Of a DNA stretch of 64,000 bases, positions 4,601 through 35,200 are shown in pieces (position 1 is the stretch's first letter; every line of letters begins with the position of its first letter). The position numbers and the translations under genes are program-made. The stretch is from Magallana gigas. Its lineage: Eukaryota. The stretch lies in contig NC_088858.1 of assembly GCF_963853765.1 (NCBI RefSeq), positions 3,100,001 through 3,164,000 on the forward strand, read 5' to 3'. The notes under the pieces are model-generated. The model did not search any database. It was not told where the DNA came from and worked only from the letters and a program-made list of their open reading frames with translations.

Positions 4601-7600
4601 ACTCTTGCATGAATTGCTTTCACTCGAATAGAGGTGTGACATTTTATTCCCCAGAATAAAATAACTAAGAATTAAAAATACAGTTCATCAGCTTTTATTT
4701 TCTAATATCATATAATAATTTTACATGATTATACTATAAATATTCCTTTCTCTACCATAATTGCTCCTTTCGCTTGCACACGCATATAACACAAGTTCAA
4801 GTATCATAATGAATATACATGTCATCAAAAATCCATATAGAGTGGAAGCAACTATAAAAATAGCAACTATTTTAAAGACGTAATTCCTATCAGAATTGCC
4901 CCTTTCTCTTGCACATGTACATAATACAAGTAGCATAATAAATATACATGTCATCAAAAATCCATATAGAGTGGAAGCAAATATAAAAATAGCAACTATT
5001 GTAAAGACGTAAGTTCACATCATTTTAGAAAAAAATATCAAAAATGAGTAAGCATGGTGGCAGAACAGGATGCATTGAAATAAGGAAAAGAAAGTTCAAT
5101 GACTGGACATCACTCAAAAATAATTATTTAATGTACGAGAGTCGATTTCTACCCATTAAATGGGCACCTCAACAATAAGGTACGGCGTTCGCACTGAAGT
5201 ATCATTAAATAATTAAGATTTGTGTTTTTTAATTGTCTGGGTCCTTTCATTGACCTTCCTTTTCCTTTGACCTAATTTTTTCCCCAATGACCGTGGCTTG
5301 ACAATGGTCGTAAGTCCGTCTGTTGATGTCACAGTTTTTTGTCTTTAGGCCTGAAACTACGCAAACGTTTGTAGTGTCGGTCCCGTTCGTCTGTTGTTTT
5401 TGAAGCCCATACTGTTTTAGACATTTGGAATTGCTGGTGAGAATCTGTCCGATCGACACCAGCGCCCGTCGCATGCCCTTGTACTGAGCCTCAATTAATG
5501 AGGTCAGTATGTCAACCAAGTCAAGGAGAGGTTTTGACTTCCAGTCAATGGCCTGTTTGAGAACGTGGTTTAGGGATTCCGAATTATTATTTGTCCAAAC
5601 ATTTTCAATTAAACCTGAAGATAATGGTTTTTGAACTTTGTTTTTTAGATTTGGTTTGCGTTTCTTTTCAATTACAGTAATTGTGTTCATTGACCGCTAA
5701 AGAGATATATAGAGATATATCAGAAGTTGTTAGATATCTGTATTTGTGTGCTGGATATTAGTAGGTTGAAGATATCTGTTTATCTTTGATAGATGTAAGT
5801 AGTTTGTAGATATCTGTATCTGTATTTCTGTTATAGATATTTTTGCTTGTGTTATCTGTATTTTGATAGAAGATGTTAGTATTTATTTCTGTTGTAAATA
5901 TTAGTATGTTTTAGATATCTGTATTTCTGTTATAAATATCAGTATGTTATAGATATTTATTTCTGTTGCAGATATCAGTACTTTTGTTGCAGATAACTGT
6001 ATGTTGTAGATATCCATAATTCTGTTGTAAATATACATGTAAGTAGGTTGCAGATATCTGTGTTTCTGTTGTAGGACCCCTGATAGAGGAGGACCAGATC
6101 CTACAAGCCATGCCTAGCGTGGTTCTTGCTCTCCACGTCCTCTGTGAGAGACGACAGCCCGACTCCTTCTGGGAACCATACATTAGTATCCTTTCTTCAA
6201 TGATTATCTGAAAGCATATTTTCATAATAATGAGCTCCATTATGAAAGAATCTAACTGTTCGGTCTTCCTGAATTTTGCTCAGTTGATGGGCCTAAAATG
6301 AGAATTTGTTTGCAGTTGCCTTTGCAACTGACCTACTTAAAAAACCTCAATATTTAAGTTTTGAATTTTTTTTATGTTAAAGTTTCCAAATATATATCAA
6401 AAAATCTGTTTTGGATTTTTGAGTCGGCTCGCGAAGCGAGAAGACCCTTGCTGTTACCGGCAAGCTCGGATTTTGAGCACAACCGTGTTATAATCTTGCG
6501 CGAATGCAGATAGTTCTCATATTCTTACCCGTTTTATTATGAATAAAAGGTGTTATGAATGTCTTTTCTTTTAATATTCCATTCTTTAAATATCAATCGT
6601 TTTATAACTTCATGAAGACTCGTGTTATAAACCTTCCATTAATCACATTTCGGATATTTAAATGAATTAACGTATTCGCGCGTACGAATACATTGTTTAT
6701 GAACGACTTGTCTACTTACAAAATACCACGTGACATTTTTGCGGGAAAAATAGCGTGTGTTTACAGAAGAGTTGGAAGACGAGTACGAGTGTAACGAAAG
6801 CAACCTGAAGAAGTAGAAATAGACACATCGTAAGTTCTGAATTTTTGCATATTCTTATAGATGCTCAATTATTGTGTTATTTAAGGAGGAATCTCGTATG
6901 TTTAGAAAATCTTTTCCTGTTTTCTTTATAGCATGCAATGTAAACAAACGGGGGTTAATGATCCGTTAATCCAGATTGGCTATTTATAATAATCCGTCAT
7001 AAATAGGGAACGCTAACTTCAAACTGTAGTTAATTTACGTGATGACAATTAATTACTGCAGAAATTGCCGTAAATAATTCAGATTTGGTGTTTGCTCGAA
7101 ATAAAAAAGGAAAACAATAGCGTTTGAATCTTGTAAAATTAAGCACAAAAATATATTAAAGACTTTGTGTGTTTACATTGTGTTGAATTCTAAAGGAAAT
7201 TTTACTTGATATTGTTTGAATTACTTTGATTTTGTGCGAAACTTGTCATTTATATGATCTTGGAGATGATGTAAAATTGAATGCATTTATTGCTTTGACT
7301 TGGAAAAAACCCATATAATTGCTTGGAGATTGATCTTGGAGTTGATGAGATGACAAAAGTTGCTTGGAGATATATTATATTGTCTTTGGAGTGAACATTA
7401 TACAAGTTACATAATATTGAAATATAAAAATATCAAACAATGGGCATCGACTTGGAGACTTGGAGATCAAGAATTGGGACCCATTTTAGTTATTTAAGAA
7501 AGAAATCTTATCTCAGTTCTTTGTTTTCATCAAAGTGGATAAAATTTGATGTCAAAAAATATTTACTACTATGTTCAATATTATTGGTTTTGTGTGGTGA

Positions 7601-10600
7601 TGTTGAAGAAAATCCTGGTCCGCCACTTAATTTTCCAATTAGAGGTAAAATACACCAAGGTGATGATATATTCAGTTTAGATTCCCGTGGAAGACAATGT
7701 GTGTCATGTTGCTTGAGTTTTTTCTTGAATGTAATGATAAAGCCACTGAATTCAAAGACCTGGTGTTCTGATGATTTGGATACAGTGCTATACATTGGTG
7801 ATTACATTTACAGACATTCAAAAAAGCATATGAAACACCATGAAGAATATTTACTAGTAAACGATTTGCCAAATTATGTCACTATTGAAACCAATGCATT
7901 TTCTTGGACAAAACGTAAAACATATTTTGGAAATATTTCACCCAGTTTTGCTGCTGAATACCCTTTACTGCGTTTAGAGTTTGCACTCTCCATGTGTCTA
8001 TCAATTGACACCTTTGCGATCTTTGTTTGTAAAGGCAATGCTTTGGGAATTTCTCATTTTGAAGACCAATTTGTTGTCTTTGATTCTCATTGTAGGAATG
8101 AACAGGGTTTTTGTTGCAGTGAAGGTGCTAGTATATTAGTAAAAAAAGCAAATGTTTCTGAAATATGTGATCACATTAGATCCCTTTTCAAATCTTTTAC
8201 ATCTGATGGTACTAAGCAATTAAATGAACAATTTGAATTACATGGATTAGTCATTAGAAAAATAGCCATGACATCAATATCTAGATATAAAAGCAATGGA
8301 ATTGCAGTTTGCACCATACCAAGTGATGTCTTTCATGACACAACTCAAGAAATACTATTAGATAATGTATCATGTAGTTCTAACAACTTTAAACCCAAGA
8401 GTTCAAATAGATTTACCTTAGTAGATTTACCATTTGGGGACATTTCAGATAGTAACATTCTTAGAAAAAGAAAACGGGAAGGTCTAAAAGCATCTAGTAC
8501 ATTTGACACAAAAAGAAAAAAGAGTAATGATGAAACAGATGTGTTAATTGAAAAATTCCATAATTTGACATCAAAGGGACCAGAATATGTGTGTACTTCA
8601 TGTTGTCAAATATTTTTTAGACATTCTGTAATAATCATGAAAACTAAGAATTTCAAAGCATGTCTGATAAAGGATTGTGTAAAGGGCATCAAAAGTGTCA
8701 GTGGCATTGAATATATTTGTTATCAGTGTAATAATTATCTCAAGAATAGTGAAGTACCACCTTGCTCCATTGGTAATAATATGAGCTTCCCAGATGTTCC
8801 AGATGAGTTGAAAAACCTCACACAGCTAGAACAGCTGTTGATATCTCCTAGAATCCCCTTTATGAAAATAAGAGAATTACCAAGGGGTGGTCAATTAGGC
8901 ATCAAAGGCAATGTTGTTAATGTTCCTGCAGATGTAAACAAAACAGTTAGATTGATTCCAAGAAACATGAGTGAGAGTGAGACTATACCTGTTAAATTTA
9001 AAAGAAGCCTTAATTTTAAAAGTCATTTAGCATTTGAACAAGTACGGCCAGAAAAAATTCTAAAAGCTGCTAAATGGTTGGTAAATCATAGCAACCTTTT
9101 TCAAAATGAAGGAATAAGTGTTAATGAAGATTGGATGGTTGAATCTCAATTTGAAAATCCTTTTGTGCAGGAGAATGAGCATAATTTTTGTGATGAAAAT
9201 AATGAAACATTTCCTCAAAGTGATATTGAAGGGGATCAGAACAATGAATTAGAGGCAGGAAATTTGGACACACTTTTACATCCTGCAGACTTTAGAGAGT
9301 TTAATAGAATACTAAGTCTTGCCCCAGCAGAGGGAAACACACCTCTTAGTATGTTTCAAGACAAGTTTTCAGAATTCCTCTGTTTTCCTGGTTTATATTG
9401 TGGCCAACCTAGGGAGGATAACAACAAAAGGATTACACCTGTGCATTACAGTACCATTTGTAAATGGGAACTACGAAATGTTGACCGAAGAGTAGCACAA
9501 AATGTAACGAACATCTTTTACAAGCTGAAAAGAGTACAAATAAAACAAATTACTGACAAAGTGACATTGGCTATGAGAAAGTGTAAACTAAAAGGTAAGA
9601 AAGTCACAGTTGGTGAAATGCTTTCCGATGACAGTGTGAACAAAATTTTAAAATTGGATCAAGGTTACAAAATATTAAGAACACTTCGTGGGTCACCACC
9701 ATACTGGGAACGTGCCAAAAAAGATATTTTTGCCATGATACGGCAGCTTGGTGTACCAACTTGGTTTTGTTCTTTTTCATCTGCAGAAACAAAATGGTTA
9801 CCACTATTACATTGCCTAGGCAAACTTATTGATATGAAAGATTATTCTGATGAAGAGTTGTTGAATATGCCTTGGGCAGAAAAGTGTAGACTCATAAAAT
9901 CTGATCCAGTAACTTGTTCTCGATATTTTCACCATAAAGTGCAGGTATTTCTCAACACAGTATTGAATAGCAGTATTAACCCTGTAGGGAAAGTAAAAGA
10001 TTATTTTTTCCGTGTTGAGTTTCAGCAAAGAGGTTCTCCTCACATACACATGTTGATATGGATTGAAAATGCGCCATCAGTTCTTGCAGACAGTTTTGAA
10101 GATGTTGCTGATTTCATAGACAGATATGTTACTTGTAAACAAAACAATGACATAAAGGAACTAATTAATTATCAGACGCATAGACATGCCCACACATGTT
10201 TGAAAAAAGGTAACAAAATTTGCAGATTTGGTTTTCCTTTGCCCCCACTGCATAAAACCATGATTTTGCAAGGATTGAAAAAGAATTCAAATGAATTCTT
10301 AGAAGCTCAAAAGAATTACTTGAAAATTGAAACTTTATTAGATGAAATGAAATTGGGAACAGAATTGCCAGTAAAATTTGATGACTTTTTGATATCTTTA
10401 GATTTAACATTGACTGATTATATAACAGCTTTAAGATCAAGTGTTAAAGAAGGGCAATGTAAAGTTTTTTTAAGGAGAAATACATCAGAAATAAGAGTCA
10501 ATAGTTACAATGATACACTACTGAAATGTTGGGAAGCAAATATGGATCTGCAGTATATCCTTGATCCATATGCCTGTGCAGCATATATTGTGTCTTACAT

Positions 10601-13600
10601 ATCAAAAGGACAACGAGGTATGTCAAACTTACTTAGACGTGCTTGTGAGGAGGCAAAAGAAAGCGATAGTGATATAAGGCAACAAGTAAGAAAGGTTGGC
10701 AATGTTTTTCTGAATCATATTGAAATTGGGGCTCAAGAAGCTGCCTACATTCTCTTGCAAATGCCTTTAAGAAAAGCAACTAGAGAATTCATTTTCATTA
10801 ATACTAATGTAGAAGATGAGAGGGTAGTTTTGATAAAACCCACTTCTATTTTAAATGAAATGCCTCAAAATTCTACGTCCATAGAGGCTGATAACAATTT
10901 GAAAAGATACCAAAGACGTCCATTCACTATGGAAAAGTACTGTTTAGCTGAATATATTGCTTGCTTTAATGTTATTTTCTCGAAATGTAAGGAAAGACAG
11001 GATGAAAAGGAAGGTGAATTGCTCGAAGATAATTATGATCTAGACAATGTTGATAATCCTCATGAAACTGATGAGAGCAACATTGATAATTTTGATGAAG
11101 TTCATTTTGCAAAGGATGGCTCTATCTTGCGAAGGAGGAAAGTTGAGCGCATAATCTATTCTGTGGGATTTAACAAAGATCATGATAAGGAAAATTATTA
11201 TAGGGAATTGCTAATGCTCTATATTCCTTGGAGAAATGAAAATACCATAATTGGAGAGAGTAACTCCTATGAAGAAAGATGCTATATCTGTCAAAATACT
11301 ATTCAAAATGTAAGAAAAAAATTTTTCCAATCCAATACTGTGGATCTATATGAGATTGAAAGAGAAATTCGCTATGATGAGGAAAGTCATTCAACAATAG
11401 TAACAGAAATGCAAAACAAGGAAGATAAAGATACCTGTGATGGTGCAAGAAGTGCAAAAGAGTATGGCTGTTTTAACCCTGATGTAAATGGTGAAGAAAA
11501 CTATGATCTAGGATTGGATTTTGGCATAGGGAGAAAACAAGTTTCTAATTGTGATGAGCAATTAAGTGGTGAAATGTTAGATTCAGAGTATAGGGAATTA
11601 GTCCAGTCTCTCAATCAGAAACAGATGGAATTTTTTTACCATGTTCTTCATTTAGTTAAAACTACAAATGATCCAATTTACAACTTTTTGTCGGGAGGTG
11701 CAGGAGTAGGAAAAAGTGTGCTTTTGAAAGCTTTGTATCAAGCTTTGATTAAGTTTTATTCTCGAAAAGCAGGCGAAAATCCAGATGATTGTTCTGTATT
11801 GGTTTGTGCACCAACAGGAAAAGCAGCATACAATGTTGGGGGGTTAACGATTCATTCAGCTTTCAATATTCCTGCTGACCAAGGCTTCAAGTTTAAACCA
11901 CTAGACATGCAGCAATTATGTTCTTACCAGGCAAAATATAAGTCTCTTAAGATGATTTTTATTGACGAGATTTCAATGGTTGGAAAAAGAATGTTTAACT
12001 TTATCAATTTGAGGCTTCAAGAGATCATGGGATCTTTGATACCATTCGGTGGAGTGTCTGTTATCGCTTTTGGAGATTTATTTCAATTAAAACCGGTAAG
12101 GGATGCCTGGATATTTTCTTCTGGTTACAGTTCTGGTAATGAACTTGAAATTTTAGGCCCAAATTTGTGGCAAGATCTATTCTCATTGTTTGAACTGACT
12201 GAAATAATGAGACAAAAAGATGATCTACGGTTTGCTCAGCTTTTGAATAGGCTAAGGGAAGGAAATCAATCACCTGAAGATTTAAAATTACTAAAAGAAA
12301 GAGAGATAGATTGTGAAAATAACATCACATTGAAAATACCACATCTGTATACAACAAGGAAAGAGGTAGCTGAATTCAATGCAACAGTGTTTGAAGGTGC
12401 ATTCATGGGAAGGAAAACAACTGTAGAAGCTATTGATTCAATAGCAGGAGACTTGTCCTCTGAAATCAAAGAAAAGATATTATCAAAAATACCATTAGAT
12501 AGTTCAAAAACTAAGGGTTTGTCAAAGTTTCTAAATCTTGCTGAGGATTTGCCTGGGGAGTTAAGTATAAATGTTGATGTCAGTGATGGACTAACAAATG
12601 GAACACCATGTATTATAAAAAAGCTTGATTACAGAGTTTATGCATCTAAAAGATGTAGCATTGTTTGGGTTCTCTTTACCAGTTCAGATATTGGTAAAAA
12701 ATGTAGAGTGCAATTTTCTCATTTGTATAACAGTGACATACATTTGCTATGGACTCCTATTCTTGAAGTTACAAGAAAATTCCAATACAATTATTACAAT
12801 TCCTTCCAAATTACTAGGCGCCAATTTCCAGTTGCTTTGGCATCTGCTAAAACTGTGCATAAAGCTCAGGGTTGTACTCTTTCCAGTGCAGTTGTCCACT
12901 TGGGATCCAAAAAACTTGATCATATGTATTATGTAGCATTAAGTCGTGTACAAAATTTATCCTCCTTGTATTTGTTAAAATTTTTGGATGAAAATATAAA
13001 GGTTTCAAGTGCTGTAGAAGAAGAAATGTGTAGACTAAGACATAGTGCCAATGTCCAGTTATCAGTACCAGTTTTTTATGATGTAACTAAATTTCAGATA
13101 ATTTATCACAATGTTCGATCCTTGCACAAGCATGTTGAAGATGTAAAGAGGGATGTTCTTTTTAAAAATGCAAATATTCTTGCTTTTTCTGAAACTCGTT
13201 TAACAGAGACAGATATTTCTGCTTTGTATGAAATCGATGGCTACAACTTGCATAGATATGATGAAAAAAAAGATGATATTAATGATAGGCCTTATCATGG
13301 ACTTGCAGTATATTACAAACACTCCATGACTTTCAAAAATTTAGCATTCTTTGGAGTAGACATTGTACTTGGGAACTTGCTTTATAAAAACAGAAAAATA
13401 ATTTTATGTTTTCTATATTGTTCACCAAAAATTTCTGCAATGCACATTTTCAAAAAAGTATTCGAAAAACTATCAAAAGAGTGTGATTATTTTCAGATTC
13501 CCACAATAATAATGGGTGATTTTAATTACAGTGTAGAAACTTTGAGTGATTTTGTTTACAAGAAGTATTTGTTAAGGCAGGTTATTAACGAGCGCACAAC

Positions 13601-16600
13601 AAATTACAATTCATTAATAGACCATATATATACCAATTTGCATCCTGAAAGCATTTCTAAATGGGGGGTCTTGGAATCTTATTACTCAGACCACAAACCA
13701 ATTTATATTGATCTATTGTAGATTAAAAAATATCTCATAAATTCACAGTTTGATAGTCAAAATTTATTATTTTAGTCTTAGAGTATTGCCTGCTTTGTAT
13801 TCATTTTGTAATAATGCAAGTTGCACTCCATAGATAGTAAAATAACATTATTGATATCATTTTATAAATTTTATGTTGCACAATTAGAAATTGTACAGCT
13901 CATATATATCTAAAATTTTATTTTAGATGCCTACACTAGAAAGTTTGTTTAAAACCAAAAAAGATGGACCATACAGTGCGCCAGTTAATGTGAAAATTTG
14001 TGGAGTAGCTGGGGAGAAGACGTATGTAAATGCCAATGGCGAGGAGAAGAAGTATGCAGTCTTGGGCGTTGCTGACTCTTCTATGATAGCGAAGTGCACG
14101 TTGTACGATACAAGTAAATTAAAAGTTCTACAAGAGGGCAACTCGGTCATGTTGCTGAATGTTATTGTTAAAGACAATAACAGTTTGACTTTGACTACAA
14201 AGTCCAGGATCTCGAAAGTTGGGGATGTTAAAGTTTCGTCTGAAAAACAAAAAGCAGCTAGAGAAATAGCATTCCCACCAATGTCTTCAGAAGTCCCTCT
14301 GAAAGACATTGAGAAATCTCCAATAAAGAGCATGCTGTCTGTCAGAGGACAGATTGTCGCTGTAAGTATCTCTCATTTATTTTATCACACTCAAAATGAG
14401 GTTGTGAATAAATTGGTAAATCATGGAATTTATATTGCTGTTTAACTATTGTAAAACTCTTTAAGGATGTAATTAGTTCTTGCTCAGTTTTACCTGAAGT
14501 TTAATAAATGTTAATTATCTTTAAAGGAGGAAATTACCAGAACTGTTTCTGTAAAAGGCAGGGATACAAAAGTGAAAAGTCTAACCATCAAGGATGACAC
14601 TGGAAAGTGCAAGGTGTCACTTTGGCGTGACCTGGCAGCCTCTGAGATAGGGATTGGACAACATGTGAAAATATCAGATGTAGTTGTCCAAACTTACAAC
14701 AATGAGAAGTCTGTGTCCTCGACAACTCGCACCATTATTGAAGTAAGGGGATATAATAATGTGTTCATCAAAAAAAAAATTTCAATATTATTACTTAAAA
14801 ATTGATTTACAAATTTCTTGAGAAAAGCAATTTTTCCAGTTGCTTTTATGCAAATATTGTTTCATAATTCATCTAATAGCTCATTGAAGTTTAACCCACA
14901 CACTAAGCTCAAGTAAGAACCACTAAGCCAGAAGAGTTAATTAAACATTGTATATTTAACTTTTTTTGTTACGTCACCCTTTTCTCATGTGTAAGCTGTG
15001 GCCACAATATGCATGATATGTGCTTTAAATTTCACATATTATTTTTTAAGAAAAAATCTGTTAAATTTCTTGATGAAAAACTTACTGTCCAGATTAGACT
15101 TTATTGATGGGCCAAAATAAAACATGAATAATAATGCATGATGGATTTTATAGTTGTGTCAATCAAGAAACTAGGTGAAAATAAATGATAAAGTTTTAAA
15201 AGAGCAAAAACAAATGACTGAAAACAGGTGAGCTATAATGATTCTGGTAAGCATTGAAGGCATTTGAAGCACAGTTGTCTCTTCAAATGGAAACCATCAG
15301 CTTTTACCTTCCTTGTTTTATTTTAACAGGAAGTAGAGGCACCAAGATCAACTACTGTGACTTCCGAAATCATTGCTTTCAACATGGAAGATTCTTGTGA
15401 CATGTCTGTGGTCATTAACGATGGGGAGCTGTACCCTTCATACAAAGTGCAGTCTAGTATAATGGCAGCATATTTAAACTGCAATGCGGAAGACTTGGAT
15501 GATGTTCTTGCCACCAAATTGCCCTTTCAAGCAACTTTCAGCATTGAGAATGGAGAAATTGTAAACTTTGAGTAAATTTTTACACAATTGATATGTCTTG
15601 GTTAAGGATTCTTGAAAATTATTTGAAAATGTTTTTAGTTAATATTGTAAAATTTCTTAGTCCCTTTGCAAAGAAAAGGGATAAAAAAGACAATTGATCT
15701 TTTTTAAGAATGGAAATTAAACAAAATAGAGACAAAAGAATTTTAGTTCTTTTAATTTTTGAAAATTTTTAAACAAAGATGCGAGGCATGTTTACTTTCT
15801 CCTATTTTACTTGAAGTTATGTGACACGGTTTTTGTACATTTTTATAATGTTTTAATTAATACAAATGAAATTTTGATGTCTTTTGTTTAGAACCTCTCA
15901 GGTCAATCACTATGTATCTTTAGAACTAATTGACTTAGATCTGCATCCATATAAAGATCAGACTTTTTATGTAGCTAGTCAGTATTAACACACAAGCCCA
16001 TGGACTTTTTAAGTATCTAGTCAGTATTATCTTGTTAAATAATGTAAATTTGTAAATATATTAAAGAACATTTTTATGTGTATTCTCTCACATTTTTTTT
16101 GTTTTTGTGGTTTTCTTTTGTCATAAAGAACAAACTACATGTATGTAACAGTACATGTATAGACTTTAATTTTCCCTTTTTTGAATATTTTCTTGATAGT
16201 GTTTTTACTTAGTGTGATTTTTATTATTTTATTTTTAGTACCTGCAGTTATTTTGTTATGGTTCATATTTTGCCTTGTTTTCTTTCCACATGGAAAGTTT
16301 CATTCTAATAAATAAAATCATAGATGTATTAGTAAACATCTAATTTTCATAATACATGTATTTGATTTGCATTGCTAATGCAATGGTAATATTTTGCTGC
16401 TTAATGTTTGCTCCACATTAATTGTCTTGTGAGAACAATTAAGTGTGCATTAGTTCTATTTGCATTGTTATAAATTTTACTTTCATGTTAACTGAACATA
16501 CCTCTGCCTTTCATTTGTTTCAACACTTAAATGTGCATTATTTCATTGTCATTATCTGCCATATTGTTTCTCATCTGATATTGTCATTCTTAAGAAGGGC

Positions 16601-26200: not shown

Positions 26201-29200
26201 AAGGGCAAAAAAATTTAGTTTCGAGCACTGGATGGTGATGAGATAGATTTTGTTTTATCTTTTACATCAATAAGTAATTATATTTGGCATTAAATTATCA
26301 TTAAATATAACCACCTGATGCAGTGTACATATTACATATATTAAAAAGGAGAAAAACTAACTTTCTGTTTTCAGAGTTACAGTACAGTGGACAAGAAGAG
26401 GTTGTCCCTCCACTTCTTCCTAATGGAGCGAGATGAGAAGGCCTCCGGAACCATCACAGTTTATGACGGCACTTCCACCATGAGTTCAGTCCTCGGGGTT
26501 TTCCCAGTCTCCAATGGGTCATTCCCGCAGTCTGTAACGACTTCTGGGAAGAGCATTACTATCAGGTTTCAGTACAGACTTCCACCAGAACCGACTATCC
26601 CAGGACAACACCGATGTAAAAACTACCGGGCATGTCTGAGATTCTTGCTTGATCTCGTCTCATATGACGGTAAGAAAGGCATTAGAATGCTGCATAAAGA
26701 GTTAAGCTTGACATGCGTGATTTCATGTTCAAAAATGTTTTTGAATGATACAAGTTAATGTATGGTAGAATGAGTATCATACCTAGTTCTACCTACATAT
26801 GATGATAGATGTAATAGTACATATACTCAGTACAGTATATTGTTTCAAAAAAAGATATCAGTTCTGATTGTTGTTAGATTATCATGTAAATATCAAACAC
26901 AATTGATCACACATGACTGTTGTCTGACTTTGTAGGACTGGACGAAGAGCTTCGGTTCATTAACTCCTCGGCCAGTAACAACACGGGGTACGGCGTAAAC
27001 GTCCAGGACATGCGCTGTAAGGTCTCCCTCAACTCGTCTGTGGTCTCCGACAATAACTACGGGGCCGGTGTCAGAGTCTACCAAGGGGCGGGTGAAATCT
27101 CCATCAACAACTCCAGGGTGGAAAGGAATGAAAGAAGTGGAGTGAACATAACGTACGCTGGAGGCTACCAGCTGGTCAACAATTCGTTTATCTGTGAAAA
27201 CCATGGTTACGGCGTCATTACAGAGTACGATCGGCTGAATAATACGCGAATACAGCATTCCCAAAAAATGGAAGTGGCGAAAGCTAAGTTTTTCTTCAAT
27301 GAGTGGATTGCCTTCAGGGTGGGAAACTACTGTAAGGAGGCCATGATTCTTGTGAATGAGAGCCACTTCAAGTATAATTATGATGAAGCCATTGAATTTC
27401 TATCCTGTAACTTTACGAAGAGTCCCCAGAAAAATGTCAATTTCAGTTTGGCTTACAACGAGTTTGACGGGAATAAGAGACATGGGATTCTGATGTCACC
27501 CCTGATTAACACGATCGGAATTATAACAAATAATACATTCATGAATCACAGTTTAGGAGCCTTGCGAATTGACAATGGTTACGATCTACTTGTCAGCAAG
27601 TGGTATGCGAAATTTGCAGTGAACTACAGAATTTTTGAAAACACTTTCAAAGAAAACCAGGGGAGGTACTGTGTAAGTCTACGATTGACCCAGAATGCTC
27701 CGAACCAGCATATGGAATTTAAGTTTAACAAAGTTATAGGGAACGCTATAAATGACACATCTCCATACTTGAATCCTCGAAGTCACGCTAATGCTCCGAT
27801 CATTGTGTCCTCCAGTAACATCGTAGTTCAGAGAAATCACATCTATAACCCTGATTCTGTAAGAGACATCGCTACACACCTTGTTGACCCGTCGGTGATA
27901 ATTAATGGCAGTCTGAATTGGTGGGAGACGATTGAACATAGGATTATCTATGATCGACTGTTTGATAGAGATGATCGTTATAACCTGGCACAGATGACTT
28001 ACTATCCTGTGTTAAAGGATGGCTGGCTGTATGGGGATAAAACAACCATCACTGACACAGAGTACAGATGGCCCTTCCAGAGGGAAAATAAAATCGGGGG
28101 AATCCTTGATGTGGAGGGGTTTACCACAGACCCCGACACAAAGCTGTACTACGTTGACAGGGATATATTCATAGTTCCCGGTGCTGTCCTAAAAATAAAC
28201 CCAGGAACCACCCTGCTGTTTGAGAATTCCATCGGCATGGTGATTCACGGTCGAATGATTGCTGATGGAGTAAGTGCGAACACCCCCATTTTGTTCACCC
28301 TGAATGAACCAGTGAACGAGACAGAGATAAGCAACAGAACGGATGCTGTGAGGCTGGCCGAGGGTCGAGATGCATATGAGGGTCGTTTAGAGGTCAATAT
28401 CAACGGTCGCTGGGGAGCAGTCTGTAAAAATGTAAGAATTTAATGTTGTACGTGGATTTGGATTACTTTATAGACAAGCAAAATGTGCCTTACATAAAGT
28501 TCTTGTTAAAACTTTCCATACAGAATTTACAAAAATACATGCTTATCATTAATACCAGTACTTGACATGAAATGAAGCAACAAAATTTCAAGGAAAATAA
28601 TATAAGTGCTCTAATGAAAGTAAAATTTACATGTAAAATTCATGTGGTGCATCAAAATTTTTTCTCTAAATTTTGAAATTAATTTGTTTTATGATCTTAC
28701 TGAAAATATATGTACTATTCATCCGTTTTTTAGGGGTGGATCCAAGAGAATGCGATGGTGGTGTGTCAGCAGCTGGGCCTGACCTATCACCCTGACTTTG
28801 GACTGGTTCACCAGCAGGTCCGGTCGTCCTCCGTCATCGAGCTGAGTTCTGTCACCTGTACTAACCTTGACACTGATATTAGGGAGTGTCACTCCATCAA
28901 ACGAGGTGACTTTGATTGTCAGTTTGACAATGTGGTCTACCTCAGGTGTCAGAAACCAACTTGGTCAGGTAGGTTAATTAATTAGTACATCGTGAAGTGA
29001 TTAGTAAAAATACACATGAAAGATGAATTGATTTAAAATGAAAATTAATAAAGATTCTGGCATTTTTTGAAAGACGTCAGTAAAAAAAATACAGCAATAA
29101 ATAAATGTAGCTTTTAGTATAATGTTAATTGTTTTTGGTTATGTCATGAAGTTGTTATTTTTTTATTGTTACAGGCATCACTATCCCTGCCATCCCAACG

Positions 29201-32200
29201 TACGGCCAAATATACGACACACAGATAAAGCATTTGATCATACAGAAGGCAGGTCAGCTGGACTATCAGGCCATGACCTTCACCCCTGCCCTTCGCATCG
29301 ACTACAATTTTTACAAGATCACCGCCCTACAGGTCACAGACTCAGTCTCTGATGGAGTGAACATCAAATACGCCAACCCGTTCACCGAGAATCTCTTTGA
29401 GAAATGTCACTTTGTGAGAAACCTAGGCAACGGCTTCCTCACCAGGAGCCCATTCCTAAAAATCACCGAGTCCACGATGAACGATAACCAGAAAGGAGGC
29501 TTTGTGTACGATCCGTTCTTCACAGAATACGAGGCACTTAGTGTCAGAAATTTTCTCCATCAGAGCCGCATGGTGTACTTTCAAACAAGAGATTACCAGC
29601 TGGGAGATAACTCGATGGCCTTCATTATATCTCAGCCAGGTATACAGGCCGAGAATCGAACATACACCATGCAGCTGTCTGTCAGCAGTTCCAATTATAG
29701 AATCACCCTCCAGCTACTGGACTACAATCCGCTGACCAATGTGGAGAAAGTGACGATTTATAACTCTAACAGGAACGGCATTTCTCCCACAACAGTCAAA
29801 TGGGAGATTGAAGAGGACCTGGTGGACTTCCCGATTACATCTAAGGGAGATAACTACCTCACCATCCAGGTCGTTGTAAGGGGAGTCCGATCTGGACGAC
29901 TAGCATTCGCTGCTCACTCCCGTAAGTTGATAAAATTGTAATCTTTTTTAATGCATAAAATGTTGTTAGTAATTTAAGTCAGAAAAGTTTTTAGAAGTTT
30001 GATAATGCAATATGTACAGTACACATTTTTTATTACATATTAGTATCATTACATGTTGTTGAAAAAGTTGAATGAAGAATTCGTTGCATAATTATTTACT
30101 CCAATTTTATATTCTCGTTTGCAGGACAATATTCCACTGCCCCCATAAATTCATTGATTGACGTCCATTTTGCCACAGTCAACAACAACTACCAAGGCAT
30201 TGTAACCAAACACTACAACAATCCGTCCAATGAAAAACTGGAGATTTTCCATCGCGTGGCAGAGGAAGAAATTCGCTTCACTAAGGTCGATATCAAAGAA
30301 AACCAGATGGAAGCTATGTACATTCCCAGTCTGACTAAGTACCATGAGCATCTGATCCCGACCCAGGAGGAAATGACAAGACCTGAAAGACTGGGTCAGA
30401 TCACTTACGTGCTTGATCAGTGTACTGTACAGAACAATGGGAAAGCCATCATAGCAGACCACAATCATGTGGACTTCTCAAACAATGTGTGGAAGTGGAA
30501 GATTCAGGCCTCCTCAGTCAGAGATAACAAGTATGGTGGATTGGAAGTGGAGCTTCCACGGGTGAACGACATCCGTGAGAAGAACAAGTGGCATTCAGTG
30601 CAGGTCAATCAGTCAACCTTTGAGAATAACAAAAACTTTGCCTTCACTGTGAATGGTTACTATGCCGATGTGGAGGTCAGTTACTGCAGGTTCGCTGATA
30701 ATGCTTGTCGCAGGGGACTGGTTCTGTTGGGTGGAATGGAAAAAGACCTGGTCATCTACAACAACGAAATGATAAACAATCAAGGGAAATATGCCATGCA
30801 GATAGACATGCAAAGTCATGCAGAATATAATAAGCCTAAAGCCTTCTGCCACTATAACAACATAAAAGGCAATAGACCAGGGCCCAACTGGTCGTTAAAT
30901 GTAGACTACACCCCGTCAACCTATGCAGTTTCTGTGTACGGAGTCCAGAACATAACCCTCAACAGAAACTTGATCCACAACCCCGACTACCAGTATGAAC
31001 TGATCGCCGGGGTTACCTCCCTGTCCCTGGAAAACAAGATGAATGTGAAGGAGAACTGGTGGGGGACTGCCATACAAGCCCAAATCATTGAGAGAATATT
31101 TGACTTTGATGACTGGAACAACTATGCAATAGCTGACTACTTTCCCCAGCTCACAGCTGACAATGTGAATAGCCTACCATCAACAGGGACACAGATTGAA
31201 AGTGGGTTTAACTTCCCCTCACTCAAAGGGAGAATTACCAAAAACATGGCTCTGGCCGGTTCCTCTACCTACTATGTCATCGCCGATGTTACAGTGATGC
31301 CCAATGCTAAACTGACTATCGAGCCGGGAACTAGACTCCAGTTTTATCCCAATGTGGGTATTCTGGTTCTTGGACAGCTTGTTGCTAGGGGACTGCCATA
31401 CAGTAGAATTTCTTTCCGACCGGTTGTTCCGGGACCAAACATCCCAAAACCTCTTCCTGAGATTGTCACTCAGAACTTCTACTCCAACACCATGAGACTG
31501 AAGCGAGACTCTGAGGGAGAAATCCCAGCAAACGAGGGGTTCCTAGAGCTGTATAACTCTTCGTCCAGTTCCTGGAATTTGATGTGTGATAATCAGTTCA
31601 ACAGAAAGACGGCTGAGGTGGTGTGCCGGGGTCTGGGAATGGAGACTCTCAATGTGGATGTGAGGTTCACCCACCTGTACGACCACTTTGTTTACAAGAA
31701 GCCCATGTACTTTGTCAAGGAGTTCTGGACTTACTCCTACTACTGTGTTGGTGATGAAAATTCTTTAGATGAGTGCCAAAGAAGAATAAATTATAAGATA
31801 CAGGACTGCATACAGGGAGCTAATTATACCTATATCCGGTGTGGCAAAAGGAATCTGGATTCAAAACTCTCTTATTGGGGCAACATTAGAATCGCCTCCC
31901 CAACGTACCAGGAGGATACGATTCGATATGTGCAGGATCAAGATCGGTCAGTGCTGGAGAACATTGATATCTACGGAGCTGGAATGTTGCACGGGGAGAG
32001 AGTGGGGGCCATTCAGGCCACCTACCGATCACCGAAAATCAACAACATCAACATCACAAACTGTCTGTGGAATGGACTGGACATCATCGCTCCTCGCTAC
32101 GAAATGAAAATCAAAACCATGAACATTGACCACAATCTTGGTTATGGCATCAACTTCCTGATTCTGAATGGAGAGTCGAGGAATGCAGATCAGTCTTCCT

Positions 32201-35200
32201 TCCGGCCACTTCTACAGAACACGGTGCCCTACTTCATGTCTGGGCTGGTGGACATCTGTAAGATGGAGAAGGAGCTGACCGTGAAGAACCGACTCATCAT
32301 TTACTACAAGTACTCCCAGAAGTTAGTGGACTGTGTCAAGGTCATCCGCAGCGAGAACCGCCTCCGTAAAGTGTCACTCAGGCTGCTACAGTTTAACTTG
32401 TATTACGACGAGTTTTATCGTAACTTACTGGAGATATACGATGGTAATACTGTGACAGAAGAAAACAGAATTGGAGTCCTTGATGCCCACAGTAAAGCCG
32501 AAGCCACAAGAACACGCTACCTGAGTAATTCTGATACTATTGGAGTCCACATCCATGCTTCCAATGCCTATGAGGACTATGGATTTATAGCGGAGATCAC
32601 CACATCCCCTCTCTCAGACCTGGCATATCCCGGTAATTTTTTAGCGGTAGTGAAGGGAATTTTGTTTTCTATGTTTACAAAAAATAATTTATAAATAACT
32701 TATTATTGTTCTTGTTACAAAATTGGCAAAAGAATATTGATGAAATAAATCTTCTTAGCATTAATTCACTTAACGTTACATCTATTAAAATCATACTCTG
32801 ACAGATGAATTGTATTTATTGTGTTAGTTTGTTTATCACGTGCTCAAAAGCAAAATATATTATGGTATCCTTTTAAATTACTGATTGCAGATAGAACAGC
32901 ATGTGTTACTACATGGGCTTTTAAAACTGAAAAAAAAAAAAAAATAATAGGTTTTAATTTTTGATTGCAGATAGTACAGTGGAGCACCGCTTTGAGCAGA
33001 TGATGGTTACAAACAATGAAGACGGGGCCATCCTCTACCAGAACGTGGGAGAGGTTTGTCCCTCCCTCTTCATCGACAGCTGTATGATCGAGAACAACGG
33101 CCTTGGGATCCTCAATCTTACGTCACACCCTGTCATTAACATTGGCATCCAAAACACCAAGATCTTCAACTTCCAGCACAACTTTGTCAACAGGAACAAG
33201 GGTGGGCTCTACTGCCAGGCACTCACCACCTCAACACAAAACCTCCTCCGTGGAAACATCACAAACAATGTCTTTTCATTCGGGAGCCATGGTGAGACTC
33301 TTAACATAAGTGGTCATCATTTCCAGAAGATGCATGTCTACGAGAATTACATCTTTAACAACTCGGCAGGGGATTATAGAGACAATGTCCATGTGCAGAC
33401 GGTGGGGATGAACTTTACGTTTAATGTGGTGGTGAATAATACTGGGCACCACATTGTGAGAACCTATAGTGAGGTGGATACCAGCGCCACTCAGCAATAC
33501 CTGGGAAACTACATCTACCAAAATAATGCCACCGCTTTATACCGAGCAGTGATGGCGGTAGGCAGTGGGAAACCCGAGTTCAAGAATAATTACCTCGTGA
33601 ACGAGGAAAGTGCATTTGAACTCCTGACAAATGAGAAACGAGAGTAAGTTAAAACGTGGAGTATTTAAACATATACAGTGTAACGAGATCATAGTTAAAT
33701 AAAAAAAGGAAATAATAATTATGATAAAATAGATGTATAAAAATCTGACAAGTTACTTTCACAAATTATGTTTTAGCTACATATATATTGGACTAGATCC
33801 ACACACAAAACCTTTTCATCAAATTTGTTATAATTGATGGAGAACTGGTATTCAGAGATCAGATAATTAGCTACAATCTTTAAAATTCCTTTACCATGTA
33901 ACCACAGCAAAACAATTGCCTTTCTAATCTTTTTTTTTTAAAAAGAATACCTGCAGTTATGTTTTCTGTAATTCAGATCGATACAAGGAATAAAGATCCA
34001 GGAGACAATTGTAGATGCCACGTACAACTGGTGGGGGTCAGAACGCCGGGGCTACATCAACGGGAAGATCTGGGATGGGCAGGACAACAGTTCTCTGGTG
34101 GAGGTCAACTTTGAACCCTACAGAGTGACCAACTCCTCACTCGTAAATGGTAGGTCAAGGTCAAACTAAAGCTATCAACAATATTTTGACATGTATGTTT
34201 AGTTTTGAATATTTTTAACAATTTGTACAGTATATCCTGTCTGTCTTGAAGAATATCGTCTACTGGTTAATGTTTGGAATCAAAATATCCAATTTATTCA
34301 AACAAGAAATAAAAGTGTCTGTACAATTTTTGTGTATTGTCTGTAGGTAAATGTCCTCCTGGCTGGACCTTGAATGCAGATCGTTGCTATAGATACATGG
34401 GGGCAGCTCTTCCCTATGCTCAAGCGGGCCAGTTTTGCAGAGTAAGTCTATGTGTGTTTGTTAACCACAAAAATAAGACAAAGCAATCAGATAGTATATC
34501 GATTTACTCACTATGAAATTGATAATTATTAATATCTTCAGTTAGGATTTATGTTGGACTTAGGTATCATCAAAGTTATTGTTTCCCATGGATACCCTTT
34601 GACACTAATTGGTCTTTCATTAGGATAACCTTGGATTCCTGGCTGAGGCCGACAACCAGGCCCCCTTCCTCCGCTACTTGTTACGGCTGACAGAGAATGT
34701 CTACACCAAGGACCTGAGGGTGTGGGTGTTCTCCGAGGTTGCCCCGGGTTACTGCAGTGCATTCCAAGATGACTATATTGTAGCTGAACAAGATTGTCAG
34801 AGGATTTTACATCCATTCATATGCGAGAAAGGTTTGTTGATAGAACAAAGTTGCATGTCAAATGTGTATAAATCAAATCATCGTTTGGAAAATAACTCAT
34901 ACATATATTTTCAATCGATTGTATTTTGAGGGCTGTTGGATATGAAAACTTAAGAAGAAACACTTCTCCCTAAATCTCTTTTTCTGTTACAGACCCATAC
35001 ATAAACCCGCCAGGAAGTGATGTTCTTGCCATAGCTATAGGAGTATCTGCTGGTGTGTTTGGTACCGCTCTAATTGTCATCATCATTCTCGCCATTCTAT
35101 GGAAAGTCAAGTCCAAGGGAAGAAAGCAGCAGAAATTTGAAAGGCAAGCGTCCATTCGCTCCTCTCTTAGGTCCTCAGTTAGGTCTCGCTCCAACATGAC

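What the first reader, a model, noticed from the sequence alone, without database searches (positions are those of the whole stretch)
7440..7622. 2A/StopGo ribosome-skipping peptide at the head of a rolling-circle transposon polyprotein
Seen: residues 42-61 of the 2093-aa Helentron ORF are LLLCSILLVLCGDVEENPGP, a perfect D(V/I)ExNPG|P motif with the usual hydrophobic helix. Known: such peptides cause co-translational skipping in picornaviruses and occur in APE-type LINEs and some marine invertebrate genes. I do not recall them being characterised in Helitron/Helentron Rep-helicases. Inference: translation would give a 60-aa leader (MGIDLETWRSRIG...NPG) plus a 2033-aa Pro-initiated DUB-Rep-Pif1-APE protein. 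Unskipped product would keep a signal/membrane-anchor-like helix, so skipping could switch the transposase between nuclear and membrane/secretory fates. Together with the DUB and SSB gene, this looks like a virus-style polyprotein strategy in a DNA transposon.
Basis: partly seen in the sequence, partly recalled or inferred. Interest (0 to 1): 0.85.

Follow-up and report, generated by a model that had tools for sequence, protein, structure and literature searches.

The report
LINE-type 2A leader on a Helentron
An intact rolling-circle DNA transposon (Helentron) starts its single giant gene with a conserved 60-residue leader ending in a textbook 2A "ribosome-skipping" peptide, and the same leader also heads LINE retrotransposon genes, so two unrelated classes of mobile DNA share one translational control cassette.

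Summary
Residues 42-61 of the 2093-aa ORF (window 7440-13721, +) read LLLCSILLVLCGDVEENPGP, a canonical class-A 2A/StopGo element. About 4e-6 such motifs are expected by chance per ORF.

It is under selection. 31 of 153 relatives carry D[VI]ExNPGP, always just upstream of the same deubiquitinase domain, and the codons at conserved residues differ synonymously.

New here: the 2A is the tail of a bipartite leader. The head is an N-terminal motif, M(G)I(S/D)(I/L)Ex(Y/W)RxxIGx(F/H), followed by a variable linker, a Leu-rich helix and the 2A. A profile of the N-motif alone finds the same leader on APE+RT ORF2s of non-LTR retrotransposons. So this is the known LINE-type 2A leader in a new host, a VTD-DUB/Rep/Pif1/APE Helentron.

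No paper in the searched library links Helitrons or Helentrons to 2A.

Likely mechanism (inferred, untested): co-translational release of the 60-aa leader, then a Pro61-initiated enzyme at reduced yield. "Virus-style polyprotein" is better read as "LINE-style leader". The 2A is absent from many related Helentrons.

The parts
7440..13721 (+). Single uninterrupted 2093-aa Helentron ORF: leader-2A, VTD DUB, DUF6570, Rep (HUH), Pif1 helicase, APE endonuclease.
   Evidence: ORF list and translation. Pfam domains. Catalytic motifs are intact: HUH at 868, YxxxY at 1049, Walker A at 1419, and APE N1891/E1918/D2027/H2085.
7440..7487 (+). Conserved N-terminal leader motif MGIDLETWRSRIGTHF. Family consensus: M(G)I(S/D)(I/L)Ex(Y/W/F)RxxIGx(F/H).
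   Evidence: M1, R9 and G13 are invariant in the 17-leader alignment A2. The motif is found only at residue 2-3, and 15 of its 16 carriers have a strict 2A; the other, P0024, has a decayed one. Synonymous codon changes occur at conserved residues. An HMM of this block alone finds LINE ORF2 N-termini at E down to 1.9e-7.
7488..7562 (+). Variable, basic linker of the leader (aa 17-41). Over aa 1-40 there are 9 K/R and 3 D/E.
   Evidence: Poorly conserved and variable in length. The whole leader, Met1 to the Pro of NPGP, is 57-228 aa in A2; P0003 carries a repeat expansion in the linker.
7563..7622 (+). 2A/StopGo element (aa 42-61): Leu-rich helix LLLCSILLVL at -19..-10, then CGDVEENPG|P. The predicted skipped bond is Gly60|Pro61 (7619|7620).
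   Evidence: Sequence. Six Leu lie at -19..-10. The AF2 model has helix 38-51 and loop 52-61, which matches the helix/loop geometry of active eukaryotic 2As. The last 10 residues are identical to a viral 2A in L092, and 13 of 14 match L096.
7623..8339 (+). Viral-tegument-like deubiquitinase (VTD) domain, aa 62-300, starting right after the 2A. Catalytic residues are Cys87, Asp215 and His217.
   Evidence: Pfam PF04843 scores 43.9 bits. AF2 pLDDT exceeds 95 over most of the domain. The Foldseek top hit is 8ADD, a zebrafish Helentron VTD (E 3.8e-17, TM 0.88), followed by MCMV M48 USP 2J7Q. C87, D215 and H217 are at least 90% conserved in A3.
8463..8522 (+). Bipartite NLS-like basic cluster RKRKREGLKASSTFDTKRKK (aa 342-361), downstream of the 2A.
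   Evidence: Regex on the translation. The NLS function is inferred only.
9591..10607 (+). Rep (HUH endonuclease) region, with HIH at aa 868-870 and YIVSY at aa 1049-1053.
   Evidence: Pfam Helitron_like_N, 4.1e-28. Motifs.
11610..12302 (+). Pif1-type helicase, with Walker A GGAGVGKS at aa 1419.
   Evidence: Pfam PIF1, 1.1e-25. Motif.
13107..13694 (+). C-terminal APE-type endonuclease, the feature that makes the element a Helentron.
   Evidence: Pfam Exo_endo_phos, 5.3e-9. Catalytic motifs.
6416..7439 (+). 5' non-coding part of the element, shared at about 99% identity with other copies. It contains CTTGGAG repeats near the ATG.
   Evidence: Eight Logan contigs from different runs align to window 6416/6423..9302 at 98.6-99.7% identity. 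Six of the window's twelve CTTGGAG sites fall in 7259-7465.
13927..14745 (+). First two exons (13927-14361 and 14527-14745) of a downstream intron-containing OB-fold (RPA/SSB-like) gene that travels with the element.
   Evidence: GT/AG borders are read from the sequence. Exon 2 gives sub-threshold OB-fold hits: CDC24_OB3 at 24.5 bits and tRNA_anti-codon at 20.5 bits. Exon 2 is 72.9% identical to the matching position downstream of relative P0002 in L013.

Best explanation
Residues 42-61 are a working class-A 2A/StopGo element. It forms the C-terminal end of a conserved leader of about 60 aa, built as follows: the N-terminal motif MGI(S/D)(I/L)ExYRxxIGxF, a basic variable linker, a Leu-rich helix, then GDVEENPG|P.

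This leader heads the single ORF of an intact, recently active Helentron (VTD-DUB, Rep, Pif1, APE).

Proposed mechanism. The Leu-rich helix sits in the ribosome exit tunnel. The Gly60-Pro61 bond is not formed and the 60-aa leader is released. In a fraction of events the ribosome resumes at Pro61 and makes the 2033-aa DUB-Rep-helicase-endonuclease, which carries an NLS-like cluster.

The leader is homologous to the one that heads ORF2 of APE-type non-LTR retrotransposons. I therefore assign it the role proposed for those elements. It detaches a small leader product from the enzyme and lowers the yield of enzyme per mRNA, limiting the element's own dosage.

What is shown: the sequence, its conservation, its homology to LINE leaders, and the geometry. 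What is inferred: the skipping itself, the reduced yield, and any function of the leader.

My confidence that the 2A skips at all is about 0.8. The figure given below is for the combined statement, including the throttle role.
For: 1. The motif is perfect and not due to chance.

2. Conservation across relatives.
- All three full-length relatives (25-49% identical over the N-terminal 330 aa) carry D-V-E-x-NPGP in front of the VTD domain.
- 31 of 153 representative homologues carry the strict motif, always 0-25 aa upstream of the VTD domain.
- Positions outside the search regex are conserved too: -8 is G or N in 30/30, -9 is S, C or A in 26/30, and -12 is L in 21/29.
- The pattern is nearly all-or-none. 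Only 2 decayed forms occur among divergent relatives.

3. Selection acts on the protein. In five DNA loci the conserved Gly, Val, Glu, Asn, Pro, Gly and Pro codons differ synonymously. All five loci have an upstream in-frame stop and an A(-3)/G(+4) start context.

4. Geometry matches active eukaryotic 2As. The AF2 helix spans 38-51, so it ends at -10, and a loop follows to +1. Snell & Matreyek 2026 describe a helix at -19..-10 and a loop at -9..+1. Six Leu lie at -19..-10. In that study 3-6 Leu marks the 'skipping plus reduced protein abundance' class.

5. The leader is a module shared with LINEs.
- The N-motif co-occurs with the 2A in 16 of 16 carriers, one of them (P0024) with a decayed 2A.
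- An HMM of the 15-aa N-motif alone finds 16 ORF starts at E<0.01. 15 have a 2A 55-113 aa later in the same ORF; in L073 the 2A lies in another frame. 11 are followed by APE-like sequence.
- Pfam confirms APE in eight of the ten ORFs scanned, with RVT_1 in L059, L082 and L041.
- Odon 2013 reports LINE 2As 40-80 aa from the ORF2 N-terminus. Odon 2013 and Luke 2013 propose down-regulation of the downstream product.

6. The element looks active. All catalytic motifs are intact, and copies about 99% identical occur in many sequencing runs.
Against: - No experiment shows skipping in this host, and no transcript or peptide data were available.
- The 2A is missing from many related VTD-Helentrons and Helitrons. 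This includes a 21-row clade, and P0137 and P0056, which have no 2A within 600 and 3000 nt upstream. It is therefore dispensable for transposition.
- The throttle role is borrowed from proposals for LINEs and from reporter data in human cells.
- The strongly conserved N-motif suggests the leader itself has a function that a pure throttle model does not explain.
- The conservation logo comes from sequences selected by the motif, so invariance of D, E, N, P, G and P in it is circular. Only the flanking positions and the codon data are independent.
Confidence: 0.55

Rival explanations
1. The leader is itself the functional product. The 2A exists to release a small protein of about 60 aa. This protein has a conserved cytosolic N-terminal motif and a C-terminal hydrophobic helix, like a tail-anchored protein. 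It would serve a need common to LINEs and Helentrons, such as binding a host factor or localising to a membrane. This is compatible with the best explanation but shifts the main purpose from throttling to making a second protein.
For: - The N-motif is as conserved as the 2A and shows synonymous codon variation.
- It occurs only together with a 2A.
- It is retained in front of unrelated enzymes: VTD-Rep-Hel, APE-RT and OTU.
- 25 of 34 leaders, including 10 of 11 LINE leaders, have a 19-residue window with Kyte-Doolittle mean of at least 1.6. In several the window lies 15-16 residues upstream of the 2A core, beyond what skipping needs.
Against: - The leader matches no known family (Pfam).
- AF2 confidence for aa 1-30 is low, at pLDDT 55-65.
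- Hydrophobicity is not universal: 9 of 34 leaders fall below the threshold, and P0019, P0027 and P0139 are far below it. The window is borderline at 1.62.
- No partner or activity can be proposed from sequence.
Confidence: 0.3
2. Dual targeting. Chains that skip yield a cytosolic or nuclear enzyme. Chains that fail to skip keep a signal-anchor-like helix and are sent to membranes or the secretory pathway. This partitions the transposase, as shown for sea-urchin NLR 2A-like signal sequences.
For: - Precedent in Roulston 2016.
- A positively charged 40-aa N-region (9 K/R, 3 D/E) precedes an apolar stretch, as in type II anchors.
- Most leaders of this class have TM-like segments.
Against: - The Roulston elements are 26-aa sequences at the very N-terminus and are predicted as signal peptides. 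Here the apolar run is only 12-13 residues and starts at residue 41. Its 19-residue hydropathy is 1.62, at the threshold.
- Leu enrichment at -19..-10 is already required for skipping.
- Some family members have no hydrophobic helix.
- A nuclear DNA transposase gains nothing obvious from secretion.
- No signal-peptide predictor was available.
Confidence: 0.15
3. Inactive relic. The leader and 2A came in with a captured or recombined LINE 5' end and are carried passively. The motif no longer skips, or skipping has no consequence.
For: - The same leader occurs on LINEs.
- Many related Helentrons do without it.
- Odon 2013 found some motif-bearing LINE 2As nearly inactive.
Against: - The 2A and N-motif stay intact across VTD-type relatives whose flanking sequence is only 21-50% identical. 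Their codons vary synonymously.
- Decayed forms are rare outside dead copies.
- The upstream context matches the active class.
Confidence: 0.07
4. Chance occurrence of an eight-residue pattern in a long, AT-rich ORF.
For: None beyond the shortness of the motif.
Against: - About 3.8e-6 matches are expected per ORF.
- 0 of 100 shuffles gave a hit.
- The motif recurs at the same position in dozens of relatives.
Confidence: 0.01

Closest known systems
N-terminal 2A-like leaders of APE-type non-LTR retrotransposon ORF2 (Heras 2006; Odon et al. 2013, PMC3708506; Luke et al. 2013, PMC3894237)
   Same: - A 2A sits 40-80 aa from the N-terminus of a transposable element's single long ORF; here it ends at residue 61.
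- It has the class-A core and a Leu-rich upstream helix.
- It occurs in marine invertebrates, molluscs included.
- The leader is directly homologous: the same N-terminal motif and 2A head APE+RT ORFs L059, L082 and L041.
   Different: - The enzyme behind the 2A is a VTD deubiquitinase plus Rep/Pif1 of a rolling-circle DNA transposon, not APE-RT.
- The element's own APE lies 1800 aa away at the C-terminus. It is not detectably close to the APEs of the leader-bearing LINEs (no phmmer hit at 1e-3).
- The term searches I ran in those two papers found no mention of a conserved N-terminal motif; I did not read them in full.
VTD-containing Helentrons (Erven, Hofmann et al. 2022, PMC9741609; PDB 8ADD)
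   Same: - Same element class and domain set: VTD DUB, RepHel and C-terminal APE.
- That paper reports them from molluscs, cnidarians, insects and vertebrates.
- The window's DUB model superposes on the zebrafish Helentron VTD 8ADD (E 3.8e-17, TM 0.88).
   Different: That paper does not mention NPGP or skipping. A large clade of the VTD tree lacks the leader and has long N-terminal extensions instead.
Viral class-A 2A peptides (FMDV F2A, Thosea asigna virus T2A and relatives)
   Same: - Identical core. The window's CGDVEENPGP equals that of viral contig L092, and 13 of 14 residues match L096.
- Same presumed ribosomal mechanism.
   Different: - Viral 2As separate large functional proteins in mid-polyprotein. 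Here only a 60-aa leader is split off.
- Six Leu at -19..-10 is typical of eukaryotic peptides, not viral ones.
2A-like signal sequences of sea-urchin NLR proteins (Roulston et al. 2016, PMC4981915)
   Same: A hydrophobic 2A-like element lies near the N-terminus, and its unskipped form could target membranes.
   Different: - Those are 26-aa elements at the extreme N-terminus of host immune genes and are predicted as signal peptides.
- This one is preceded by a conserved 40-aa segment, sits in a transposon, and is only borderline hydrophobic.

Membership tests
Class-A 2A/StopGo peptide | C-terminal D(V/I)ExNPG|P core in frame, with the ORF continuing from the Pro | tested here: met
   GDVEENPGP at aa 53-61. 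The ORF continues for 2032 more residues.
Class-A 2A/StopGo peptide | Helical, Leu-rich or hydrophobic tract at about -19..-10, followed by a loop to +1 | tested here: met
   LLLCSILLVL has 6 Leu. The AF2 model has helix 38-51 and loop 52-61. The criterion comes from Snell & Matreyek 2026 and Rao 2025.
Class-A 2A/StopGo peptide | Measured co-translational separation of upstream and downstream products, abolished by mutating NPGP | not testable with these tools
   This needs a reporter assay or N-terminal sequencing.
LINE-type N-terminal 2A leader | 2A lies within about 40-80 aa of the N-terminus of the element's long ORF | tested here: met
   The 2A ends at residue 61. In A2 it ends at 57-107 in 15 of 17 leaders; the other two, with expanded linkers, end at 157 and 228. 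The criterion is from Odon 2013.
LINE-type N-terminal 2A leader | Sequence homology of the leader outside the 2A core | tested here: met
   An HMM of the N-motif alone, built from VTD-type leaders, hits LINE ORF starts L027 (1.9e-7), L016 (1.2e-6), L059 (1.4e-6) and eight more at E<0.01. Pfam confirms APE or RT in the ten ORFs scanned from this set.
LINE-type N-terminal 2A leader | An APE-RT (ORF2) enzyme follows the 2A | tested here: not met
   A VTD DUB, Rep and Pif1 follow, and there is no RT. It is therefore the same leader in a different element class, not a LINE.
Helentron (rolling-circle transposon) | Rep with HUH and two-Tyr motifs, a Pif1 helicase and a C-terminal APE endonuclease in one ORF | tested here: met
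   Pfam. Motifs: HIH at 868, YIVSY at 1049, GGAGVGKS at 1419, and APE N/E/D/H.
Helentron (rolling-circle transposon) | Characteristic termini, subterminal palindromes and TT target site | tested here: inconclusive
   The 5' limit is about 6416, judged from where other copies stop aligning. The inverted-repeat scan gave no convincing termini. The 3' end was not located.
VTD (viral tegument-like) deubiquitinase | Papain-like VTD fold with a Cys/Asp/His active site | tested here: met
   Foldseek hits 8ADD and 2J7Q. PF04843 scores above its cutoff. C87, D215 and H217 are conserved.
VTD (viral tegument-like) deubiquitinase | Ubiquitin or NEDD8 cleavage activity | not testable with these tools
   This was shown for zebrafish Helentron VTDs by Erven et al. 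2022, not for this protein.
2A-like dual-function signal sequence (Roulston 2016) | Element of about 26 aa at the extreme N-terminus, predicted or shown to act as a co-translational signal sequence | tested here: not met
   The 2A starts at residue 42, behind a conserved 40-aa segment. The apolar run is 12-13 aa and the KD-19 value is 1.62. No signal-peptide predictor was available, so a signal-anchor function is not excluded.

The most novel reading that the evidence does not exclude
The leader (N-motif, hydrophobic helix, 2A) is a portable expression cassette that has moved between retrotransposons (LINEs) and rolling-circle DNA transposons (Helentrons). It encodes a released micro-protein with its own conserved function, common to both element classes. 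It would be more than a translational throttle: a previously unrecognised shared 'gene' of unrelated mobile elements.
Probability: 0.3. Interest if true: 0.8.

Novelty: new variant of a known kind. Interest (0 to 1): 0.62.

Why it matters
2A/StopGo recoding is known from RNA viruses, LINE retrotransposons and a few host gene families. Here it appears, under selection, in a DNA transposon that replicates by a rolling circle. The whole leader, not just the eight-residue core, is shared with LINEs.

This has three consequences:
1. The list of element classes that control their enzyme through ribosome skipping grows.
2. There is concrete evidence for exchange, or common inheritance, of a translational control module between unrelated transposon classes. 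This adds to the already known LINE origin of the Helentron APE domain.
3. The conserved 15-residue N-terminal motif is a testable handle on the long-open question of what the peptide upstream of transposon 2As does.

Practically, annotation of Helentron proteins in invertebrate genomes should allow for two products from one ORF. The family also offers dozens of natural Leu-rich 2A variants for studies of skipping and yield.

Tried and rejected
- Two homologous-protein searches restricted to the leader found nothing new, because too few shared words passed the length filter. These were window aa 1-61 and P0027 aa 1-92. All three searches of that tool are now used.
- The look-up of encoding contigs had no record for P0168 and P0117 and no DNA for P0038.
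- Supplementary tables of the two large 2A catalogues (Rao 2025; Snell & Matreyek 2026) are not held. I could not check whether Helentron 2As sit unannotated in their lists.
- Upstream DNA of P0137 (600 nt) and P0056 (3 kb) has no 2A or N-motif in any forward frame. Their lack of a leader is real, not a gene-calling artefact.
- The inverted-repeat and tandem-repeat scans did not reveal the element's termini.
- I considered that the leader and the APE were captured together from one LINE. This is not supported: the window's APE gives no phmmer hit (E<=1e-3) to the leader-bearing LINE ORFs, and the two parts lie at opposite ends of the ORF.
- N-myristoylation of Gly2 is rejected. Many family members start M-I-S with no Gly, and position 6 is usually not S/T/A/G/C/N.
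- A DNA-level explanation for N-motif conservation is rejected for the family as a whole, because the codons differ. The window's own lineage does, however, repeat part of that DNA in its 5' UTR.

Full report
**1. Observation**

The ORF at window 7440-13721 (+) is uninterrupted and encodes 2093 aa. Residues 42-61 read LLLCSILLVLCGDVEENPGP, at nt 7563-7622.

An in-frame stop lies five codons upstream of the ATG. The ATG has A at -3 and G at +4.

A degenerate DNA pattern for D[VI]ExNPGP matches once in the 64-kb window, and none of 100 dinucleotide-preserving shuffles gave a match. From the ORF's own composition, 3.8e-6 matches are expected per ORF.

The next in-frame Met is residue 99, which lies past the catalytic Cys87 of the first domain. 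A complete enzyme can therefore only be made by translating through the motif.

**2. The element**

Pfam finds five domains:
- Herpes_teg_N at 72-222
- DUF6570 at 437-565
- Helitron_like_N at 718-873
- PIF1 at 1391-1621
- Exo_endo_phos at 1890-2085

The catalytic signatures are all intact: HIH at 868, YIVSY at 1049, Walker A GGAGVGKS at 1419, and the APE N/E/D/H residues. A bipartite NLS-like cluster lies at 342-361. This is the Rep-Pif1-APE architecture that defines Helentrons.

I predicted the structure of aa 1-330 with a 61-sequence alignment. Mean pLDDT is 85 and exceeds 95 across most of residues 62-300. The best PDB match is 8ADD (E 3.8e-17, TM 0.88), followed by the MCMV M48 ubiquitin-specific protease 2J7Q.

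8ADD is the VTD deubiquitinase of a zebrafish Helentron (Erven et al. 2022, PMC9741609). That paper reports VTD-Helentrons from vertebrates, insects, cnidarians and molluscs, and shows ubiquitin/NEDD8 cleavage for the fish enzymes. It contains no mention of NPGP or skipping. Cys87, Asp215 and His217 are at least 90% conserved in the alignment.

Downstream lies an intron-containing gene. Its second exon (14527-14745) gives sub-threshold OB-fold hits, and it is also present behind the closest relative.

Eight contigs from different sequencing runs match window 6416/6423-9302 at 98.6-99.7% identity. The family is therefore young and multi-copy, and its 5' limit is near 6416.

**3. Conservation of the 2A**

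All three full-length relatives found with the N-terminal 330 aa carry D-V-E-x-NPGP directly before the VTD domain. They are 25-49% identical over that stretch.

An exhaustive HMMER search of 1.84 billion representatives gave 864 hits. Among the best 150 plus those three:
- 31 carry the strict motif, always 0-25 aa upstream of a VTD domain.
- 110 VTD occurrences have at least 30 aa of upstream sequence available. Of these, 25 are strict, and two are visibly decayed (DVATNPGP and VIESNRGP). The rest have none.

Invariance of D, E, N, P, G and P in a logo built from motif-selected sequences is circular. Three lines of evidence are independent of that selection:
- Positions -8 (G or N, 30/30), -9 (S, C or A, 26/30) and -12 (L, 21/29) are conserved.
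- The pattern is nearly all-or-none.
- In five DNA loci the conserved residues use different synonymous codons: GGT/GGC/GGA, GTT/GTA, GAA/GAG, AAT/AAC, CCT/CCA/CCC, GGT/GGA/GGG and CCG/CCC/CCA.

Near-identical dead copies of the window's own family show the expected scattered damage, such as NLGP and NFGL.

On a tree of 142 VTD domains the 2A-bearing rows are clustered. They still need at least 6 changes on well-supported branches. One clade of 21 rows with long N-terminal extensions has none. P0137 and P0056 have no 2A within 600 and 3000 nt upstream.

The 2A is therefore selected where present, but it is not universal among Helentrons.

Named hosts include the nemertean Lineus longissimus (with 2A) and the abalone Haliotis asinina (without).

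**4. The leader is a module, and it is shared with LINEs**

Every 2A-bearing relative with a complete N-terminus starts with M(G)I(S/D)(I/L)Ex(Y/W/F)RxxIGx(F/H). In the 17-leader alignment, M1, R9 and G13 are invariant, as is the 2A core. The linker between them is unalignable and varies in length. P0003, whose leader is 228 aa, carries a repeat expansion in it.

The motif occurs only at residue 2-3. Fifteen of its 16 carriers have a strict 2A, and the other, P0024, has a decayed one. Its codons also vary synonymously.

I scanned metagenome contigs with the leader alignment, which returned 71 loci. In many of them the same N-motif and 2A are followed not by a VTD but by the start of an APE domain.

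Pfam confirms this:
- Exo_endo_phos plus RVT_1 in L059, L082 and L041
- APE in L027, L024, L047, L025 and L039
- a Helitron architecture in L021
- an OTU protease in L072

I then built an HMM from the 15-residue N-motif of VTD-type leaders only, excluding the 2A. Searched against 3986 ORF segments, it gives 16 hits at E<0.01. Fifteen of them have a 2A 55-113 aa later in the same ORF, and in L073 the 2A lies in another frame. Eleven are followed by APE-like sequence.

The Helentron leader is thus homologous to the N-terminal 2A leader of APE-type LINE ORF2. Odon et al. 2013 placed LINE 2As 40-80 aa from the N-terminus in molluscs, echinoderms, cnidarians and others.

The window's own APE gives no hit to these LINE ORFs. 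A joint capture of leader and APE is therefore not supported.

**5. Mechanism**

The AF2 model gives a helix over residues 38-51 and a loop over 52-61. This is the helix at -19..-10 and loop at -9..+1 that Snell & Matreyek 2026 found typical of active eukaryotic 2As.

The window has six Leu at -19..-10. In that study, 3-6 Leu marks peptides that skip and also lower protein abundance. Most retrotransposon 2As fell into that class.

Odon 2013 and Luke 2013 argued that the LINE 2A down-regulates the downstream enzyme.

My best explanation is therefore as follows. The 60-aa leader is released co-translationally. The ribosome resumes at Pro61 to make the NLS-bearing DUB-Rep-helicase-endonuclease, at a reduced yield per mRNA. 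All of this is inferred; nothing here measures skipping.

The conserved N-motif argues that the leader also has a function of its own (rival 1). 25 of 34 leaders have a TM-like 19-residue window. This includes 10 of 11 LINE leaders. The window is borderline at 1.62.

However, the Roulston 2016 elements are 26-aa sequences at the very N-terminus. Here the apolar run is 12-13 residues and starts at residue 41.

**6. Literature and novelty**

No paper in the searched library holds Helentron with 2A-like, Helitron with NPGP, or Helitron with 2A-like. None of the following mentions Helitrons or helicases:
- Odon 2013
- Luke 2013
- Rao 2025
- Snell & Matreyek 2026
- the 2026 PNAS StopGo structure paper
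- the 2026 viral 2A landscape preprint

The Helentron VTD paper does not mention 2A. The large catalogues may contain such peptides unannotated; their tables were not available. Subscription-only literature and Repbase reports were not searchable.

I rate this a new variant of a known kind. The peptide is canonical and the leader architecture is known from LINEs. The host is a new element class, and the leader carries a conserved N-terminal motif that I did not find described.

**7. Verdict**

- Confidence that this is a functional 2A is about 0.8.
- Confidence in the combined explanation (functional 2A acting mainly as a leader-release and throttle device) is about 0.55.
- Interest is 0.62.

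Noticed in passing
window 7259-7465: Six of the window's twelve CTTGGAG sites cluster in 207 nt, all on the + strand, just upstream of and across the start codon. The 400 nt upstream of the ATG share 12 seven-mers with the first 48 nt of the ORF (shuffle mean 0.95, maximum 6). The 5' UTR therefore looks like degenerate partial duplications of the ORF start. The closest relative, L013, has one such 12-nt copy 31 nt upstream, and more distant relatives have none.
   Followed up: partly
window 7718-7723: The window has a T6 run here and an intact frame. All eight near-identical Logan contigs, from different sequencing runs, have T5. This shifts the frame after codon 94 and gives a 95-aa product (leader, 2A and the DUB N-terminus), with the rest of the ORF open in another frame. 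Most sampled copies may be frameshifted, or short-read assemblies may miscall the homopolymer.
   Followed up: partly
window 13927-15400: A downstream gene with GT/AG introns (exons 13927-14361, 14527-14745, and a further one from about 15331) encodes an OB-fold-like protein. It is conserved at 72.9% DNA identity behind the related element in L013. It is probably the RPA/SSB-like accessory gene of Helentrons.
   Followed up: partly
window 5732-6074: Tandem repeats with 38-nt and 21-nt units (ATATCTGTAT-type) lie a few hundred bases upstream of where other copies of the element start to align (about 6416). It is not known whether they belong to the element or to its flank.
   Followed up: no
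window 26920-33647; 41981-42466; 60217-61227: Long ORF pieces elsewhere in the window look like host gene exons. They give right-handed beta-helix plus SRCR domains at 26.9-33.6 kb, a NUDIX fragment at about 42 kb, and a WSD/D-TOX E motif at about 60.2 kb.
   Followed up: no
L001 8001-8684 (P0003 aa 1-228): In this distant relative, which lacks an APE domain, the linker between N-motif and 2A holds about five tandem copies of a unit of about 21 aa (SHCATATQLNQQAIVPLLQTI). The leader is stretched to 228 aa while both ends stay intact, so the spacing between N-motif and 2A is not constrained.
   Followed up: no
L044-L081 (WLWD/WLWI contigs): A high-copy family in one assembly has the form MGRHRYPAPHWESS...KLLLLCGDVEANPGP|YNKGKLTSIQCDVKM. 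It has no N-motif, and most copies have only a short ORF after the 2A. It is another uncharacterised repeated element carrying a 2A.
   Followed up: no
L042 22-1250: Four 2A motifs (..IAGDVE[LQ]NPGP|SASSSMGSVNNL..) recur at spacings of about 300-470 nt, in different frames, on a 1.3-kb contig. This looks like a tandem array of 2A-containing units.
   Followed up: no
P0013, P0018, P0028, P0031, P0036, P0039 and similar: These proteins have 3-8 tandem VTD domains and no Rep, helicase or 2A. They form a separate, well-supported clade of the VTD tree. They probably correspond to the multi-copy inactive insect VTD proteins described by Erven et al. 2022.
   Followed up: partly
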